Below are positions 41,539 to 63,009 of a stretch of DNA of 64,000 bases, in pieces. The translations under genes and the position numbers were made by a program. Location of the stretch: assembly GCA_964252035.1 (NCBI GenBank), contig OZ176212.1; one strand, written 5' to 3'. The DNA is from Podarcis erhardii (taxonomy: Eukaryota). Below the pieces are notes generated by a model. It did no database searches. It was not told the origin of the DNA and was given only the letters and a program-made list of their open reading frames with translations. The stretch's first letter is position 1. Each line of letters starts with the position of its first letter.

Positions 41539-42048
41539 ATGCTTTCTCTGAAGAAATATTTCACTGAAGGACTCATCCAGTTCACCATTCTCCTCAGCTT
41601 AATAGGTGTGAGGGTGGATGTAGATACTTATCTGAACTCGCATCTTCCCCCTCTGCGAGAGATCTTTTTGGGCCAGAGTTCTGCTTACACCCAGACACAG
41701 TTCCACAACCTGCGGAACACTTTAGATGGCTATGTCATCCATCCAAAAAGTGTAGATCTGGACTATTATTTCACAGCTCGACGGCTTCTTAACCAGGTGA
41801 GGGCCCTGGATAGGTTCCAGGTGCCCACCACAGAAGTCAGTGCCTGGTTGGTACACCGAGATTCTGAAGGTTCTGTCTCTGGTGCCCAACCCAATACAGG
41901 CATTGCCCTTGAGAATGGCAGTGGCTTGCAAGATGGAACTGTTCCAGACAATGAAGTGAGGGAAAATGGAGCAGAACAAGGATTTGGTGAAGAATTGGAA
42001 GACCTAGGTGCTGTGGCTCCTCCAATGAATGGTGATCTAACCAAAGAG
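41539..42048 (+). CDS. NFE2L1: NFE2L1 first coding exon (170 aa)
   Basis: 510 nt ending ...GDLTKE at GAG|GTAGGT. Confidence 0.97.
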
Positions 42049-56100: not shown

Positions 56101-59100
56101 AAGGGATGGTATAAATATTTCTGAGAGAAAAGGTTGGATCAGACCAGTAAAGGTCCATGGCAGCCTCCAGGGAGGCTACAAGTCTCCCCTGTTTCTTCCT
56201 CAGCAGCTGCTTATGTATGTAGAGGTTCCATTTTACTGTCATGGTTATTGGGTTTATTAATGGCCACCTTCTATTAACCTGTCCAATCCCTTTTTAAAGC
56301 TTTCTAAAGCAGTAGCCAGCACATAATAAATATAAATATAAATATCCCTTCCATCTGACTGGGTTGCTCCAGCCACTCTTGTTGCGGCGAATTCCTTAAA
56401 TTGTGTTCTGTGATAAAGTGATTTTAAAAAATCTACTCATTGAGTTATTTGTTACATCAGTAGAGGAAAATATTTCCTCTTCGCTTTCTCCACACTTTGA
56501 TTAATTAAAAAAGTTACTGTCATGTCCCTTGATCTTCCTTTTCTAAACTGCCAGTGAAATCCTATGCATGTAAATACAATTGATTAAGATGGGACTTTCC
56601 CTGAGATAAGAGTGCATATTAGAATCACAGGTTTAAAAGTCTCAAATGCTTTAGCATTGGGGAACATATGTGAAGTGGCTATGGAAAGGGGTGTATAAAT
56701 ATTTTGTGTTTTATTATTTGTAGAATGCTGCTGATTGCTTGTGTGAGTGGATGTGGTAGTAGTAGAATCACAGAATCATTGTAGAGTTGGAAGGGACCCT
56801 GAGGGGCATCTAGTCCAACTCCCTGCAATGCAGGAATCCTGGCCACAGCCAGGTGTGCTCGAACCACCAGCCTTCTGGTTAACAACAAGACGCACTGACC
56901 CTCCTCTGTCCTGGCACTCTGTCTGTGTCTGTTAACGCTGCTGTGTAAGAATCCATAGACCCCCCCCCTTCACCATATTTGTAAATGCTCATTCCTAGGG
57001 CTTTGCGTAGTTTGAAGTGTAGTGCAGCAAAATCTCAGCAGCCGGAGTGGGCTTCAGCAGAGCTTTTCTGGCGGTTGAGGGGCTTCCATACCCTTCCGTG
57101 CTGCCATAAAACAAAAGTGTGGGGGTGGGGATGAAATCTGTGTTGATACGGAAGAGGGAACTTTTGGTAATCTCCGGCAGGCTGGGGAAAACATTCTAGG
57201 CAAGGGTGCTGCCTAGCAGGACTGATTTTGGTAGGTGATATGCAATAGCGAAGGAATGTTGTCGGCATTTTATTCTTTTCGGTGTTCCCCGAACCGCTGC
57301 GAGCATCACTGCCTGGCTTGGGTGGGGCATCTTGGCGTGGGAGCTTCTCAAGGAGACAGAGGCCCAAACATTGCTGCAGCTCCCAGGGCGACCTGGGCGG
57401 GGTGGAAGAGAGGAGCAGCAATTGGCTCTCCTCTTCGCATTCTAGGTGACGAGTGCGAGGAGGAGCCCTTTCCTCTGCATCCTCAGCAGGGACCTGAGGC
57501 CTGGGATTGGTTCTTTCTGCAGCCTAGGTAACCAGCACAGGGCGGAGCCTGGCTCCCTCTGCATCCTCCGCGGTGACCTGGGGGAGGGGATTGGCTCCGG
57601 CTGCAGCCTAGGTAACGGGTGTGTGTGGTGGGGGGGGGGTTGTCTCAGTCTCACTGCAGCCTCAGCCCGGCACATGGGGTGGGGATTCCATATCTGCAGC
57701 CTGGGCATTGAGCAGGGGGTGGGGATTCGCCGGAACTCCTCTAAGCAACAAGAGGAGGAGCGCTGAGGATTGGATCTCATGCTGGGGCGGAGGGAGGAGG
57801 GCTGGCGATAGCACAGCACCTGTGGGTCACATGCTGGCAAAGGAGGGGGGCTTCTAAACAACTCGGGGGCGGCTGGCAAGCTTGCCAAAAAAGAAAAGAA
57901 AAAAAGAGCAACTGTTAACTGAAACCAGAGATGTCTGTCCAGCACCCTGCCTGGGTCACCCAGCTCTGCCTGCCCGGAATTTGCGCTCTACATAGACCAT
58001 GATCTGGGTGGACAGCTCTGGGAGCGGCAGCTGGGGACATGAGAAAGGTATCCCTTTTAACCCTTTTCTTGCCCCTCCTTCATGCCTGCTATTAGATTGT
58101 GGCTAGAGCAGGCCAGATCTCTTCCCACCAGGCACCTTGGAGCTAATAAATCTGTAGGGGGGAAAGGATGTGTTATATCGACTTGAGGAGGGAGAGGCTC
58201 TGAGAACAAGAGGAAATGGGTTGTGTGAGAAATGAATGTCCTGAAATGGGGGAGGGGGAAGCGGAGTCTTGGAATGGGGGGGATACATCTGGGAAGAAGC
58301 AGATGGTCAAAATGAGGGTGAGTGAGGGGGTGCAGACCAAAGACGCCTTTGGCCCATATGGGTACCCTGGCCTGTTTACTGAAAGGTGCAGGTGGGGGGG
58401 GGCAGAGATGGGTACCTTGCTGGCATATCTCTTTGCCCACACCATCTGATCGCCCCGAGACCTGAGAAATCTTCTGTGTGTAACTGGACAAGGCATCCAT
58501 CCAGATTGTATTATTTAATTTGAACGGGTTTTTCGTGTTAAAGGGCACACTGCAGGAGAATAACGAAGTTGGGTTTGGTCAAGGTACCCATTTTGTGAGA
58601 TGGGGAAGAGGGTTGTCTAAACTTGTTTTAGTTAATTTGGGGTGAATTAAAGAAGTGGGGGGGGGGGGAGGAAAGGTGATCCAAATAGTGCCTCCGACAA
58701 ATTAGGCCCTGAAAGAGCATTTGATTCTGCTGGGGTGGGGATAGTGAGAGTCCATAGCAGAACAGGATTGGCAGTTACAGAAGAGACTGATTTGTAAGGA
58801 GGTCCTGAAATATTTGACCAGTGATTGAAGGTGATACCAGAATTTGCATATTCAAGTTGGAGCTATTATTGACAGGAGGAAAATTCTGAATAGTGTTGCA
58901 ACACAGAGCAACCTCACGACACTTTTCTGTTTTCTTTTTGGTAGTGCTGTGAAAAAGAGGGCACTTTACTCTGCTGAGTTCTTGTCTGGAAGAAAGAAAC
59001 AGCAGCTTAAAAATTAGTGTTTCTGGCAGCCTGAATTCTGGATCCATATGTAACCTCTGTACATAGTAGAATAGTAGTTTGGGGTGGGTGGGTATCTGTT

Positions 59101-62100
59101 TTCCTTAGGAAATAGGTTTGTGGAGGGTGGGGCCAGAAGGGCTGGCTGACAGTGGTGCTTAAAAAACTGCATATGCCTTGTAACAAAAAAGAGCAACCGC
59201 CTGTGCCACAGGGTGGGGAGGTACCTCTGTGTGGTTGGCAGTTCTAGGGCTGGGCCTGGATGAAAGGAACACACTCCTGCAGTGCGTGAATAAATATAGC
59301 CTGCCTGTGGGGGGTGGCTTAGCCTTGGGAGAGGCCTGTCCTGCAGAGGAAGAATTTTCAGGATATTGTGGGGGAAGGGAGATGGCATTCCAAAGGAGAA
59401 GCATGTCTAGAGTCTGGTCTGGATGAGGGCTGATCACTGCTTTGCGGTTGGAAGAAGGCAGTGTGTTTTGAGTGCGTTCAGCGGGGCAATTTGCTTTCAG
59501 TTTGAAGGGCTGGTTAAGGTAGGCAGCTCTGCTGTCTGGAGCAGAGGGAGCTGGCCAGGCAGAGCACGCATGGCAAAGCCGGGTTCTTGAGTTGCATCAG
59601 GTGGCTGTAAATGCAGAGAATCCCCACCCCTTTATGCAAATAGCCAGAATGGCACCACAGGCTGATGCAAGCCCGCTATGGAGCAGCAATCCAGAATGAC
59701 AATTGGCCCTCCCTTCCCTCCCTCCTCCCCTCCCTCCGCCAGCCAGCCAGCCAGCCGTCTGAGCGGTTAAAGCTGCAGACTCCCTGCTGCCTGGACAGAG
59801 CGAGCACTGCTGCGTAGCATGGGCAGCGGCAAGGAGACAGCTCTGTTGCTGTTCATGGAGTTCCCGGTCTGTGCCCCGGAGCAGCCTCGTTGCAGAGCCG
59901 CTCTTGGCCAGCTCCCAGTGCAGAATGGCTGTAGGTGGGGGGAAGGTATCTGGAGCCCCACGACATCAGGGATGGTCCAGAAAAGGAGCAGGAAAGGTGG
60001 GGCTGCACCACATTCAGACTGAAGGGCGGCACTTGGAGGTGAGTGGGGTCAAATGGTGGCGGGTGCAGTACGTCACAAGGGAGGCTGAAGTTGCAGGGGA
60101 GGGCATCCTCCAGAGAAAATAGGGCGGCAAGGAAGGAAGAAGCCTTATTAAGAGTTTTTAAAGTCCCCCCCCCTTGTTTTTCTTTTGTTTTTAGGACATT
60201 GATTTAATTGACATCCTGTGGAGACAGGATATCGACCTTGGAGCTGGGCGTGAGATTTTTGACTACAGCCACCGCCAGAAGGAGAACGAAGTGGACAAAG
60301 AACCAAATAATGGGGAGGAGTGTGGGGATGGCTGGAGGAGCAGAGGGGGCGATGTCGCTGACAGGGCCTTGCTAGTGGATGGCGAGACAGGGGAAAGCTT
60401 TCCTGCGCAGGTAAAAAAACAAGTCAACTCCCTAGTTGGGTAGGACAGTTTTCTTATCCACCATCCTGGGATTGTTCTTTGTAGCTGTTCAGTAGAGGAA
60501 AATCTGCTGCATGCTTGGGTAGGCCTTGGGAAGAAAATAGCTGTGATGCGAGAAAATGTCCTCCCCTTTTCAAGTTCAGACACAACTCTTAAAAGGGAAT
60601 TAGTTCTGAAACACTGATGTTCAGTGTTACTGATCCTGCCCAGGAAGCAGGCAGGGCTGCTTCTCCGTTTGTGTTGGCTTTGAGTGCATAGATATTCATT
60701 ACCGTTCCATGCTTGGTTCAAGGCCTTGGTCTGTGCTCTGTTGCTTTGTGGTAGTCCTCAACATGCACCCCTTGTTTCTTCCTAGGCTTCACACCACCAC
60801 CTTCTGATCCTTCTCTCAGCATCCTGGCTTCTTCTCACCTCTGCTCTGTGAGAATTGGGCCTTCTCCCATGTCTTATTTTTGGTTGCAACTGTTAAGAGT
60901 ATGTTATTTAGTAAGAATTTTTAAATCTCTCTCTATAAATCTCATTAGTTTGGTCCTAGCCAGCCTCCTTCCAAATGGGGCTAGGATTTATTAGAGAATC
61001 CTGCTAGCAGATGCTGTGGGGAGGCCATTTCCCCTTATTTCTCTTTATAACACCTCACACACTGCTCTGGAGCCAATCTTGTGGGGGCAAAGGGGACAGC
61101 AGGGGGAATAGGTAGAATCACCATGAGTTTCCCTCCAACATGGCAGGAGCATCTTGTGAGTAGGATTCTACTTGGGGTTGCTCTTGCTTGGCATCCTAGT
61201 CTATATCTCTTTCTAATTTGGTGAATCCATCCTGAGTCTTCAGAGTAGGACTGTGATATCCTATCAAAGCCAGTTAATAAACTCTTGACCCTGGATGGCT
61301 TTGAGAACAGTTGTTACTGGGCACATCAGATCTCCAGATTCAGTTCAGTCAGTACCCACTTATAAGACTGCAGGAATGCAGGGTAGGTGACAGCCTCTGG
61401 AAAGGCTCACCCCAGTTAGAATATCCTCTGGAAGCAGGGCTTCCCTTCTTGGGGGCTGCATCTAATTCTGCACCAAGAGAATTTGCATTTGATTAAATTT
61501 TACTGTGTGACATAAACCGTTTCTTGACTTGAGCATTTGAAATTTTGTCAGAATGCAGGGTGTTTGAGAAGAGACTCAGGGGTGTCATTGGAATAAGTAG
61601 TGGGGTGGTTGTGGGACAGGGAACTGGGTGTGGTATTGGAAACCGCGCCAGATAGACAACCATGTAGCTATTGGCTGTTGAGGTGAGTTTTTAGGAAACT
61701 GTGTCTCTTGGTCAGGACTACCTGGTTCTGAGCATTTAGCCCTGTCCCAGGCTGTGCATTGGACTACATCACTGGGTTTCGTCTGTGTCTGAGACGGGTG
61801 TCACCTCAGCATTAATTACATTTATCTAAGTTCAAGAGAAGAATAAAAGTGAGTGGGGCGAGGAGGAAAGATAAAGGTTAGTTTAGATTATTCAGCTAAT
61901 AGATTGCTTTACACAGCCAAAAGAAAAGGAAGTCTTTGTGTGAATTACATAGACAGTAACACACAAAATACAATACTTTTAAAAGCAATGCAGATGCACT
62001 ATAATGTGCATCTACAACATCAGCAGCAACATAAAATAACCACCCCATCCACATAAAAATGTATACACACAAGCACACACAAACACAGCCACTATTAATG

Positions 62101-63009
62101 CTGCTGAAATGTCAAGGGGAATAAAAATGTCTGCCTGGTGCTGGAAGGATGACAGAAAAGGGCTATTTTCTCATTGCCACCCTCCAGATATCTCTTAAAA
62201 GAGGCACACAAAGAATAGGAGAATGTACAGGCTTTTAAAAAAAAGTTAGTCGTATCTTGCCGGTGGAGGTTGGTCTGAAAAAGTTGAAGGGCATGGGTAT
62301 AGATGATCTTACAGTAAAATGACACTCGAATTATTTGCTCTTCCAGGTGCCTGGTGTTGAGGACCAGACAGCCTTGTCCTTGGAGGAGTGCCTTAGGCTG
62401 CTGGAGGCCACGTTTCCCTTTGGGGAGAATTCGGAGGTGGGTCAATGATGGCCCTTGGGAAAGGGAAGATTTAACTGCTTAGTAGTAACAGCATATGGCA
62501 TTTCTATAGATGCATTCAGTGTAAAAAATGGACTTGGACAATCTTTATCTCATGCCCTTGCCATAACCTTGTGAGGCTGTGAATTCTTCCAAATGAAGAG
62601 AAAAGCTTGTTCTTGTTCCAGGCACAAGGCCAGGTAGATTAGCAGGAAAGAAGTGGCGAGAATGCCACCCCTCCCTCCCTGCCCCTGCAAATGCTTTAAA
62701 GCCCCTAATACTGTGGTTGCAGGGAACCTTGGGAGTGGGGGATGGCTGTTAGTCTGCATCAGAAGTTCATGCAGAGAGGAAGCGGGAGTAATGATGTTGC
62801 TGACATGCTGCTTCACTGCCACATAATGAAAGGTGTTTTGCTTTCAGTTTCCAGCTGCAGATGCCCCCAGCCTAACTGAAGTTCTGCCGAGTGAGACCGG
62901 GCCTTCCACTGTGCCAGAGGGGCTTCTGTCTCCCCTACTAACAGGGACAGAGTTGCCCTTCGACCTGGAGCAGCAGTGGCAGGACCTCATGTCTATAATG
63001 GAAACGCAG
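41539..63009 (+). CDS. NFE2L1: NFE2L1 (Nrf1/TCF11, CNC-bZIP), partial CDS: join(41539-42048, 60195-60410, 62347-62436, 62848-63009); 326 aa; the bZIP-containing last exon is not in the window
   Basis: MLSLKKYFTEGLIQFTILLSLIGVRVDVDTY... ER-anchor N-terminus; DDI2 cleavage site W103/L104 retained; DIDLIDILWRQDIDLG and ETGE motifs; FDLEQQWQDLMSIME; all junctions phase 0 and GT-AG. Confidence 0.97.
43209..43377. mobile_element. Tc1/mariner (Tigger-like) MITE
   Basis: CTGTATTTTTCGCTCTATAACAC / GTGTTATGGTGCAAAAAATACGG TIRs with TA TSD. Confidence 0.8.
43694..43729. repeat. (GT)n microsatellite
   Basis: Read directly. Confidence 0.98.
47070..47665 (+). mobile_element. L2-clade LINE 3' fragment
   Basis: Degenerate PVLD.V.LPL...VIHALVTCR...YN...FSAVAPWLWNSLPLEI.LAP. 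Confidence 0.75.
49110..49295 (-). mobile_element. tRNA-head/CR1-tail SINE (Squam3-like); similar copies at about 39215-39362 (-) and 36245-36432 (+)
   Basis: CATAGGAACATAGG tail and CCATCTAGCTCAGTATTG...GCATGCAAAGCAG body. Confidence 0.55.
49556..49743. mobile_element. Tigger-like MITE
   Basis: CAATGGTACCTCTAGTTGC / GCAACCAGAGGTACCACTG TIRs with TA TSD. Confidence 0.85.
51245..51380. mobile_element. 136-bp palindromic hAT MITE (MER5-like); degraded relatives near 1030, 12826, 13430 and 15850
   Basis: CAGGCATAGGCAAACT / AGTTTGCCTATGCCTG TIRs; perfect 8-bp TSD TTTTAGTT. Confidence 0.92.
53061..53132. repeat. Compound (TATC)n-(CT)n microsatellite
   Basis: Read directly. Confidence 0.97.
54213..54687. 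mobile_element. hAT MITE with GC-rich interior
   Basis: CAGGGGTCAGCAAACT / AGTTTGCCTACCAATG ends; TSD CCCTTGAC / CTCTTGAC. Confidence 0.85.
56763..56904 (-). mobile_element. SINE with tRNA-Asn(GTT)-like head and CR1-derived 3' tail
   Basis: Minus strand ...GTTAACCAGAAGGCTGGTGGTTCGAGCACACC... then GATTCCTGCATTGCAGGGAGTTGGACTAGATG...ATTCTGTGATTCTA. Confidence 0.7.
57370..57780 (+). repeat. CpG-rich degenerate tandem repeat (84-bp period) of ATTGG plus CCTAGGTAAC modules; promoter-like
   Basis: CCTCTGCATCCTC at 57472/57556, ATTGG at 57421/57506/57590, CTGCAGCCTAGGTAAC at 57517/57601. Confidence 0.75.
59580..59760 (+). promoter_or_regulatory. Candidate internal NFE2L1 promoter: two CARE/AARE motifs, octamer, CACCC, CCAAT, pyrimidine tract
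   Basis: TTGCATCA 59592-59599, CCCCACCCC 59622-59630, ATGCAAAT 59634-59641, TGATGCAA 59663-59670, ATTGG 59702-59706. Confidence 0.55.
59925..60038 (+). CDS. NFE2L1: Candidate alternative first coding exon of NFE2L1 (38 aa, MAVGGGKV...EGRHLE)
   Basis: Strong Kozak (agaATGg), 114 nt open, phase-0 donor GAG|GTGAGT, 156-nt intron to the 60195 acceptor. Confidence 0.5.
60195..60410 (+). CDS. NFE2L1: NFE2L1 Neh2-like exon (DIDLIDIL...ETGESFPAQ, 72 aa)
   Basis: ttttag acceptor; CAG|GTAAAA donor. Confidence 0.96.
62347..62436 (+). CDS. NFE2L1: NFE2L1 90-nt cassette exon (TCF11-type; VPGVEDQTALSLEECLRLLEATFPFGENSE)
   Basis: ttccag acceptor; GAG|GTGGGT donor. Confidence 0.95.
62848..63009 (+). CDS. 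NFE2L1: NFE2L1 exon FPAADAPS...FDLEQQWQDLMSIMETQ (54 aa)
   Basis: tttcag acceptor; CAG|GTGAGG donor. Confidence 0.96.

What the first reader, a model, noticed from the sequence alone, without database searches (positions are those of the whole stretch)
59580..60410. Candidate stress-inducible internal promoter and in-frame alternative first exon giving an ER-anchor-less NFE2L1
Seen: two copies of CTGATGCAA in inverted orientation (cores at 59592-59599 and 59663-59670) bracket a CACCC box and an octamer. A CCAAT box and pyrimidine tract follow. Downstream is a strong-Kozak ATG (59925), 38 open codons and a phase-0 GAG|GTGAGT donor 156 nt before the DIDLIDIL exon. Known: TGATGCAA is the ATF4-C/EBP CARE/AARE core. 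Mammalian Nrf1b uses an alternative promoter and a short unique N-terminus spliced to this region, lacks the ER transmembrane segment and is nuclear. Inference: this lizard may make an ISR-inducible isoform that bypasses ERAD/DDI2 processing, with a different, longer unique N-terminus.
Basis: partly seen in the sequence, partly recalled or inferred. Interest (0 to 1): 0.7.

Follow-up and report, generated by a model that had tools for sequence, protein, structure and literature searches.

The report
Conserved internal NFE2L1 promoter-like exon
Just upstream of the third NFE2L1 exon, this wall lizard has a control element with two ATF4-type sites shared with birds and a mammal, followed by a squamate-conserved exon that is spliced onto NFE2L1 in one lizard RNA data set. 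Transcripts of this kind lack the membrane anchor, but stress induction and translation remain untested.

Summary

**What is there**
- Both inverted CTGATGCAA copies, the CACCC box, the octamer, the ATG at 59925, 38 open codons, the GAG|GTGAGT donor at 60038/60039 and the 156-nt intron are all present.
- The motif cluster (59590-59720) is conserved in two other squamates, two birds and a non-human mammal.
- The ATG, the frame length and the donor are conserved in three other squamates. A fourth covers only the donor end.

**Expression**
- One RNA-derived contig (run X8) joins 60038 to 60195.
- A raw RNA-seq run (X23) shows none: 0 reads on the exon against 37 canonical junction reads.
- The exon is therefore real but minor or tissue-specific.

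**What stays open**
- The start site is unknown. Contigs reach upstream of the motifs.
- Two conserved out-of-frame upstream ATGs precede 59925.
- The ORF interior evolves about neutrally, so the 38-residue N-terminus is unproven.
- ATF4 inducibility is untested. Mouse ATF4 ChIP-seq does hit Nfe2l1, but the peak position is not given.

**Relation to known isoforms**
The homologues of Nrf1b and NFE2L1-616 lie about 2 kb further upstream (57.3-58.0 kb). This is a third, distinct unit.

The scan has not noted this element before.

The parts
59540..59720 (+). Conserved cis-regulatory module. It holds CARE-type site 1 with an overlapping E-box, a kappaB-like GAGAATCCCC, a CACCC box, an octamer/D-box (TTATGCAAAT), an ATGGCACCA block, CARE-type site 2, and in squamates only an inverted CCAAT box.
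   Evidence: Identity over 59590-59690 is 96% to squamate L007, 78% to a bird (L002) and 81% to a mammal (L003). blastn E-values are 1e-13 to 8e-16. Invariant columns are listed.
59592..59600 (-). CARE-type core 1. TTGCATCAG reads as CTGATGCAA on the minus strand, giving TGATGCAAC with its flank.
   Evidence: Invariant in Podarcis, L007, L011, bird L002 and mammal L003.
59634..59641 (+). Octamer ATGCAAAT, which overlaps a D-box-like TTATGCAA.
   Evidence: TTATGCAAAT is invariant in all five aligned amniote sequences.
59662..59670 (+). CARE-type core 2, CTGATGCAA (TGATGCAAG with its flank).
   Evidence: GCTGATGCAAG is invariant in the lizards, both birds and the mammal.
59707..59756 (+). Pyrimidine-rich (CCCT)n followed by (GCCA)n. 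Its length varies between species. It could be the spacer of a promoter or the pyrimidine tract and CAG of a 3' splice site.
   Evidence: read laying masked 59705-59765 and dropped one joint and two loose ends there for run X8.
59757..59924 (+). Conserved leader of the alternative exon. It holds a TTAAAG at 59767-59772 and two conserved out-of-frame upstream ATGs at 59819 (strong Kozak context) and 59855.
   Evidence: Pairwise divergence among the four squamates is 0.12-0.22, lower than in the ORF. The upstream ATGs are conserved, but their frame relative to the donor differs between species.
59925..60038 (+). Candidate coding part of the alternative exon. It is an ATG followed by 38 codons ending in phase 0.
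   Evidence: Open and 38, 39, 38 and 38 codons long in Podarcis, L007, L011 and L009. The only indel is 3 nt. Pooled dN/dS is 0.48, against 0.64 and 0.91 in the other two frames.
60039..60194 (+). 156-nt intron with a GTGAGT donor and the shared acceptor of exon 3.
   Evidence: A contig of run X8 skips exactly this stretch with GT..AG ends. CACTTGGAG|GTGAGT is invariant in four squamates; L010 has one change. Conservation drops right after the donor.
60195..60410 (+). NFE2L1 exon 3 (DIDLIDILW...PAQ), common to all isoforms.
   Evidence: Depth is 41x in X23, with 37 canonical exon-2 junction reads.
41539..42048 (+). Canonical exon 2, which carries the start codon and the ER membrane anchor. The alternative exon bypasses it.
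   Evidence: The loose-end consensus at 60193 in X23 matches its 3' end.

Best explanation
A conserved regulatory module lies in NFE2L1 intron 2, about 480-600 bp upstream of exon 3. It holds two C/EBP-ATF composite sites, an octamer/D-box, a CACCC box and a kappaB-like site.

In squamates the module is followed by a conserved transcribed segment of about 300 nt. That segment ends in an invariant consensus 5' splice site, which is spliced in phase 0 to exon 3.

The unit most likely acts as a minor, tissue- or condition-specific internal promoter with an alternative first exon. Its transcripts lack exons 1-2 and therefore the ER anchor.

- **Shown:** the sequence features, their conservation, and one spliced RNA contig.
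- **Inferred:** that transcription starts at this module, that the 38-codon ORF is translated, and that ATF4 or C/EBP factors drive the unit.
For: - **Splicing.** In run X8 a 334-nt contig (depth 5.9) covers 59766-60036 and joins to 60193-60221, skipping 156 nt with GT..AG ends. X8 is RNA, because its exon-3 contig (depth 25.6) is itself spliced to exon 4. The alternative contig ends at 60221. For 31-mers, that is the last word specific to the alternative path before it merges with the exon 2-exon 3 path (my inference). No unspliced contig covers 60101-60181.
- **Branch point.** The contig of run X4 ends at 60039, where a spliced and an unspliced path would diverge.
- **Constraint in close relatives.** In X4, 12 of 806 letters differ inside 59173-60039, against 73 of 1170 in the flanks (p = 1e-7). 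In X8 the counts are 10 of 675 against 16 of 367 (p = 0.006).
- **Constraint in distant squamates.** Blocks at 59540-60079 are 72-93% identical to L007, against about 50-60% in the surrounding intron. The ATG, the 38/39-codon length and the donor are kept in L007, L009 and L011.
- **Amniote conservation.** The module is conserved in birds and a mammal, with both CARE cores and the octamer invariant.
- **Rarity.** An ATG-ORF-donor arrangement of this kind is found at only 2 places in 128 kb.
- **Precedent.** Mammalian NFE2L1 has proven intronic promoters that give nuclear, anchor-less isoforms (PMC3483171, PMC10646089). Mouse ATF4 ChIP-seq finds GCN2-dependent binding at Nfe2l1 (PMC9436309).
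Against: - Raw RNA-seq run X23 has 0 reads over 59372-60181, with 41x on exon 3 and 37 canonical junction reads.
- Only one run shows the joint.
- No start site is known. Contigs begin at 59173 (X4), 59294 (X8) and 59463 (X1), all upstream of the motifs. X1 reads through the donor unspliced.
- The library type of X1, X4 and X8 is only guessed. X8 is shown to be RNA by its splices; X1 and X4 are not.
- Two conserved upstream ATGs precede 59925 out of frame.
- The ORF interior diverges as fast as synonymous sites of exon 3, and the dN/dS of its frame is not clearly lower than that of the other frames.
- All three frames are open in L007 and L011.
- CpG observed/expected is 0.33, so this is not a CpG island.
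- No protein with this N-terminus was found.
Confidence: 0.6

Rival explanations
1. The conserved module is an intronic enhancer that serves the canonical NFE2L1 promoter at 34-35.5 kb. On this reading, the RNA seen over it is enhancer or pre-mRNA transcription. In squamates that RNA happens to meet a strong donor and is spliced to exon 3, giving a low-level, non-coding by-product.
For: - The module, but not the exon, is conserved in birds and the mammal.
- Contigs cover the module itself and start upstream of it.
- The exon is absent from X23.
- The ORF interior evolves about neutrally and is preceded by upstream ATGs.
Against: - The donor and about 15 nt after it, the leader and the ATG context are conserved across four squamates. 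A by-product would not need that.
- In X8 the spliced form reaches about a quarter of the exon-3 contig depth.
Confidence: 0.25
2. The segment is an internal cassette (poison) exon. The pyrimidine tract and the CAG repeats at 59707-59753 serve as a 3' splice site. The exon is then inserted between exons 2 and 3 and brings in stop codons.
For: - A long pyrimidine tract followed by several CAGs lies directly before the conserved segment.
- From 59742 to 60038 is 297 nt, a multiple of three.
- The main frame has one stop in Podarcis and one in L007.
- Read laying dropped a joint and two loose ends in the masked 59705-59765 of X8.
Against: - The tract varies in length like a microsatellite.
- The contigs of X4 and X1 run straight through it.
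- The adjacent conserved sequence is made of transcription-factor motifs.
- No exon 2 to 597xx joint was reported.
- All 37 loose ends at exon 3 in X23 come from exon 2.
Confidence: 0.1
3. The motifs, the ORF and the donor are a chance arrangement in a GC-rich stretch of intron and have no function.
For: - Stop-poor composition keeps frames open.
Against: Conservation from squamates to a mammal, an invariant donor, and a spliced RNA contig.
Confidence: 0.03

Closest known systems
Nrf1b (mouse and human NFE2L1 isoform; PMC3483171)
   Same: [quoted passage not shown] The exon is spliced in phase 0 directly to the DIDLIDIL exon. The ER-targeting N-terminus is replaced by a short unique peptide.
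   Different: Nrf1b has a 12-residue peptide (MGWESH/R...). Its homologue in this window is at 57674, about 2.5 kb upstream of exon 3 and upstream of the module studied here. Start site, promoter activity, protein and nuclear location were shown by experiment for Nrf1b. None of these is shown here.
NFE2L1-616 (human; PMC10646089)
   Same: It has an intronic promoter in the same intron, a unique N-terminus of similar length (44 against 38 residues) that is basic and rich in Gly and Ser, low expression compared with the long isoforms, and no ER anchor.
   Different: The reverse primer of its promoter construct matches the mammalian contig L003 at 185-204, beside the Nrf1b exon and about 1 kb upstream of the conserved module. 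It therefore belongs to the upstream block, which is homologous to lizard 57.3-58.0 kb. By eye, the antigen peptides printed in the paper show no similarity to the lizard ORF. No alignment was run.
C/EBP-ATF response elements (CARE/AARE) of ATF4 target genes such as DDIT3, ASNS, TRIB3, ATF3 and the aminoacyl-tRNA synthetase genes (PMC5175342; core sequences from my own knowledge)
   Same: Two copies of the 9-bp core TGATGNAAN are present and invariant across amniotes. CAREs are known to work from introns as well as promoters. NFE2L1 is reported as an ATF4 ChIP-seq target in mouse (PMC9436309).
   Different: No binding or induction data exist for this element. The position of the mouse peak is not given in the text. 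The same sequences also fit C/EBP dimers, and TTATGCAA fits PAR-bZIP/NFIL3 factors.
Short NFE2L1 forms made by internal translation (LCR-F1/Nrf1beta; cited in PMC10404558)
   Same: If the upstream ATGs block 59925, ribosomes could start only at downstream in-frame methionines. That would give a short anchor-less protein of this type.
   Different: Those forms are described from the canonical mRNA, not from an alternative leader.

Membership tests
NFE2L1 alternative-first-exon isoforms (Nrf1b / NFE2L1-616 class) | An exon in the intron upstream of the DIDLIDIL exon, spliced to it so that the frame is kept | tested here: met
   The joint 60038|60195 with GT..AG ends is seen in an RNA contig of X8. 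Phase 0 follows from the sequence.
NFE2L1 alternative-first-exon isoforms (Nrf1b / NFE2L1-616 class) | Its own transcription start and promoter activity | tested here: inconclusive
   Contigs cannot show starts. They begin at 59173, 59294 and 59463, and near 59732 beside a masked repeat. X23 raw reads have no coverage there. The conserved motif module argues for regulatory function.
NFE2L1 alternative-first-exon isoforms (Nrf1b / NFE2L1-616 class) | An in-frame start codon giving a unique N-terminus, translated into a protein without the ER anchor | tested here: inconclusive
   The ATG and frame are conserved in four squamates. Against this stand two conserved upstream ATGs, a weak coding signal and no matching protein.
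NFE2L1 alternative-first-exon isoforms (Nrf1b / NFE2L1-616 class) | Sequence or positional orthology to the Nrf1b or NFE2L1-616 first exon | tested here: not met
   The Nrf1b-like ATG is at 57674. In the mammal it is at L003:120 and the module at L003:1233-1372. The 616 construct primer maps to L003:185-204.
CARE/AARE, ATF4-dependent stress elements | Core sequence TGATGNAAN | tested here: met
   TGATGCAAC (minus strand, 59592-59600) and TGATGCAAG (59662-59671).
CARE/AARE, ATF4-dependent stress elements | Evolutionary conservation of the core | tested here: met
   Both cores are invariant in squamates, a bird and a mammal. The second is also invariant in a second bird.
CARE/AARE, ATF4-dependent stress elements | ATF4-C/EBP occupancy and induction by amino-acid limitation or ER stress | not testable with these tools
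   There is only indirect evidence. ATF4 ChIP-seq in mouse fibroblasts binds the Nfe2l1 locus in a GCN2-dependent way, but the position is not stated (PMC9436309).

The most novel reading that the evidence does not exclude
The double-CARE module conserved across amniotes is the site through which ATF4 acts on NFE2L1. In squamates it has also become the promoter of a stress-induced transcript. The product of that transcript skips ER insertion and the NGLY1/DDI2 processing route. This would link the integrated stress response directly to proteasome and antioxidant gene control.
Probability: 0.2. Interest if true: 0.7.

Novelty: new variant of a known kind. Interest (0 to 1): 0.55.

Why it matters
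NFE2L1 activity is normally gated by ER insertion, retrotranslocation and cleavage. Isoforms that bypass this gate are known only from mammals and are poorly understood.

This finding gives two testable things:
- **A candidate ATF4 site.** A short, deeply conserved element with two ATF4-type sites sits next to exon 3. It could explain how ATF4 regulates NFE2L1 in mammals as well.
- **A natural comparison.** In one lineage, squamates, this element is coupled to a spliced exon. That allows comparison with lineages where it is not.

Tried and rejected
- **Word search with the 83-residue ORF (59871-60119):** no hit.
- **Exon-3 peptide search of the representative library and of the word index:** only unspliced intron read-through ORFs and canonical fragments came back. 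None carried the alternative N-terminus.
- **Exact look-up of the 67-residue upstream ORF:** not on record.
- **Rfam scan of 57000-60500:** nothing meaningful.
- **Self-comparison of 58400-60800 with the rest of the window:** no repeat copies.
- **Paper search for the run accessions, to name the species:** nothing. The organisms behind L001-L012 are inferred only from their exon-3 proteins.
- **Codon-position counts and dN/dS:** inconclusive.
- **A homologous exon after the module in birds and the mammal:** one bird has an ATG, 35 codons and a phase-0 GTGAGG 71 nt before exon 3. The other bird and the mammal do not, so I treat it as chance.
- **The second candidate at 58216-58317:** poorly conserved, so I rejected it as chance.
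- **Pattern scan of metagenome contigs for the module:** not run, because it would probably return human contamination.
- **The contig of P0012:** not fetched, because it looks primate- or human-like.

Full report
**1. The observation**

- The inverted 9-mers lie at 59592-59600 and 59662-59670 (pair I4).
- CCCCACCCC is at 59622-59630.
- The octamer is at 59634-59641.
- An inverted CCAAT is at 59702-59706.
- A (CCCT)n/(GCCA)n tract is at 59707-59756.
- The ATG at 59925 has A at -3 and G at +4.
- 38 open codons follow.
- GAG|GTGAGT is at 60038/60039.
- A 156-nt intron ends at the acceptor of the DIDLIDILW exon (60195).

The 9-mer occurs only at these two sites in the 64 kb. A strong-Kozak ATG with an open frame ending in phase 0 at GTRAGT occurs at only two places on both strands.

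**2. Gene context**

- NFE2L1 runs on the + strand.
- A CpG island lies at 34.0-35.5 kb.
- The start codon and ER-anchor exon are at 41539-42048.
- Exon 3 is at 60195-60410.
- The 30-codon TCF11-type exon is at 62347-62436.

Intron 2 is therefore 18.1 kb long, and the candidate sits at its very end. The region is not a repeat within the window and matches no Rfam family.

**3. Transcript evidence**

*Run X23* (raw stranded RNA-seq) covers exon 3 at 41x.
- It has 37 reads whose loose ends match the end of exon 2.
- It has 14 reads that go on to the 30-codon exon.
- It has no read at all over 59372-60181.
- The alternative exon is unused in that sample.

*Run X8* is shown to be RNA by its exon 3 to exon 4 splice.
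- It holds a 334-nt contig of depth 5.9.
- That contig covers 59766-60036 and continues at 60193-60221, skipping 156 nt with GT..AG ends.
- It stops at 60221. For 31-mers, that is the last word specific to this path before it merges with the exon 2-exon 3 path. This is my inference from the shared GAG.
- No unspliced contig covers the small intron in X8.
- The exon-3 contig has depth 25.6, so the alternative form is a sizeable minority there.

*Run X4.* Its contig ends at 60039, the point where a spliced and an unspliced path would part.

*Run X1.* It has one isolated, unspliced contig at 59463-60113.

Contigs cannot show starts or strand. The library type of X1 and X4 is only guessed. X8, X4 and X1 all reach upstream of the motif cluster, to 59294, 59173 and 59463. 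The start site is therefore open, and the motifs may lie inside the transcribed part.

**4. Conservation among close relatives**

The contigs of X4 and X8 come from related lizards.
- X4: 12 of 806 letters differ inside 59173-60039, against 73 of 1170 in the flanks (p = 1e-7).
- X8: 10 of 675 differ inside, against 16 of 367 in the flanks (p = 0.006).

**5. Conservation among distant species**

I searched the representative protein library with the exon-3 peptide. I then fetched the contigs of the fragments it found. This gave the following genomic pieces of the same intron-exon junction:
- other squamates: L007/L008, L009, L011/L012, and the divergent L010;
- two birds: L001 and L002;
- a non-human mammal: L003-L006. 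Its exon-3 protein differs from the primate-like P0012 at several residues.

Against L007, three blocks stand out from an intron background of about 50-60% identity:
- 57320-58040 (88-98%);
- 59240-59360 (85-88%);
- 59540-60079 (72-93%).

Conservation falls right after the donor.

In L007, L009 and L011 the following are all conserved:
- the motif module (L009 starts only at the pyrimidine tract, so it does not cover this one);
- a TTAAAG;
- two upstream ATGs;
- the ATG context;
- CACTTGGAG|GTGAGT.

The ORF is 39, 38 and 38 codons long in these three, and its only indel is 3 nt.

Only the module at 59590-59720 aligns to the birds and the mammal (E = 1e-13 to 8e-16). Its identity to them is 78-81%. 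GTTGCATCAGGTGG, CCCACCCC, TTATGCAAAT, ATGGCACCA and GCTGATGCAAG are kept. The exon body is not alignable outside squamates.

**6. Coding potential**

The case for the 38-residue N-terminus is weak.
- Two conserved ATGs, at 59819 (strong Kozak context) and 59855, precede 59925 out of frame. Their frame relative to the donor differs between species.
- Pooled dN/dS is 0.48 in the ORF frame, against 0.64 and 0.91 in the other frames. The leader gives 0.50-0.99. Exon 3 gives 0.14, against 1.96 and 0.88.
- The ORF interior diverges about as fast as synonymous sites of exon 3.
- All three frames are open in L007 and L011.
- No database protein carries this N-terminus. These searches cannot see full-length isoforms that are hidden inside clusters.

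**7. Relation to the known mammalian isoforms**

Nrf1b replaces the first 174 residues by 12 residues from an alternative first exon that has its own promoter (PMC3483171). NFE2L1-616 has 44 unique residues from a promoter in the same intron (PMC10646089).

On the mammalian contig L003 the layout is as follows:
- the Nrf1b exon is at 120-155;
- the reverse primer of the 616 promoter construct matches 185-204 exactly;
- the conserved module is at 1233-1372;
- exon 3 starts at 1769.

In the lizard the Nrf1b-like ATG is at 57674, inside the strongly conserved block 57320-58040. The unit under study is therefore a third element, downstream of both known ones. Its exon is seen only in squamates.

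**8. The stress reading**

Both cores fit the 9-bp C/EBP-ATF element, and they are invariant across amniotes. ATF4 ChIP-seq in mouse fibroblasts names Nfe2l1 as a GCN2-dependent target. The peak position is shown only in a figure (PMC9436309).

This makes ATF4 binding to the module plausible. I estimate about 0.5 for some amniote, and about 0.3 for induction of the lizard transcript. Nothing here tests it. The same sequences also fit C/EBP dimers, and TTATGCAA fits PAR-bZIP/NFIL3 factors (my own knowledge).

**9. Verdict**

- **Supported:** a real, conserved exon that is sometimes spliced, sitting behind a deeply conserved regulatory module.
- **Open:** whether it is a first exon, whether it is translated, and whether it is stress-induced.

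My estimates:
- 0.6 for an internal promoter with an alternative first exon;
- 0.25 for an enhancer with by-product splicing;
- 0.1 for an internal poison exon;
- 0.03 for chance.

It is a new variant of a known kind, and of moderate interest.

Noticed in passing
window 57320-58047: This block is 88-98% identical to squamate L007. It holds an Nrf1b-like start at 57674 (MGWGFH..., against MGWESH... in the mammal), four inverted CCAAT boxes about 83 nt apart, and an exon-like end GAGAAAG|GTATCC at 58047/58048. It is probably the lizard counterpart of the mammalian Nrf1b / NFE2L1-616 promoter region. The Nrf1b donor itself is not kept.
   Followed up: partly
window 58216-58317: A second strong-Kozak ATG with 34 open codons ends in phase 0 at GTGAGT in the same intron. 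It is only 48-65% identical to L007, so it is probably chance. The reads were laid from 58400 onwards and do not cover it.
   Followed up: partly
window 59237-59360: A further block is conserved in L007 and L011 (85-88%). It contains TGAATAAATATAG, which could be TATA-like or a poly(A) signal, and GAGGAAG. A contig of X8 starts at 59294 and X23 has a few sense reads here. It may be a second regulatory block or the true start region.
   Followed up: no
window 62347-62436: The 30-codon TCF11-type exon is present and used. Fourteen X23 reads and the X8 contig go from 60410 to 62347.
   Followed up: partly
L010:228-443: This squamate copy of exon 3 has many changes in the otherwise invariant core (DIDLG, REIFDYSHRQKE), yet it keeps the upstream GTGAGT donor. 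It may be a paralogue or a decaying duplicate in an unknown species.
   Followed up: no
window 60237: Four X23 reads leave exon 3 here for a sequence that is not in the window. They are most likely reads from a paralogue (NFE2L2 or NFE2L3) that match in part.
   Followed up: no
L002:540-715 and protein P0006: In birds the module lies only 180-280 nt before exon 3. In one bird the whole interval is a single open frame continuous with exon 3. A transcript starting at the module could then enter exon 3 without any splice.
   Followed up: no
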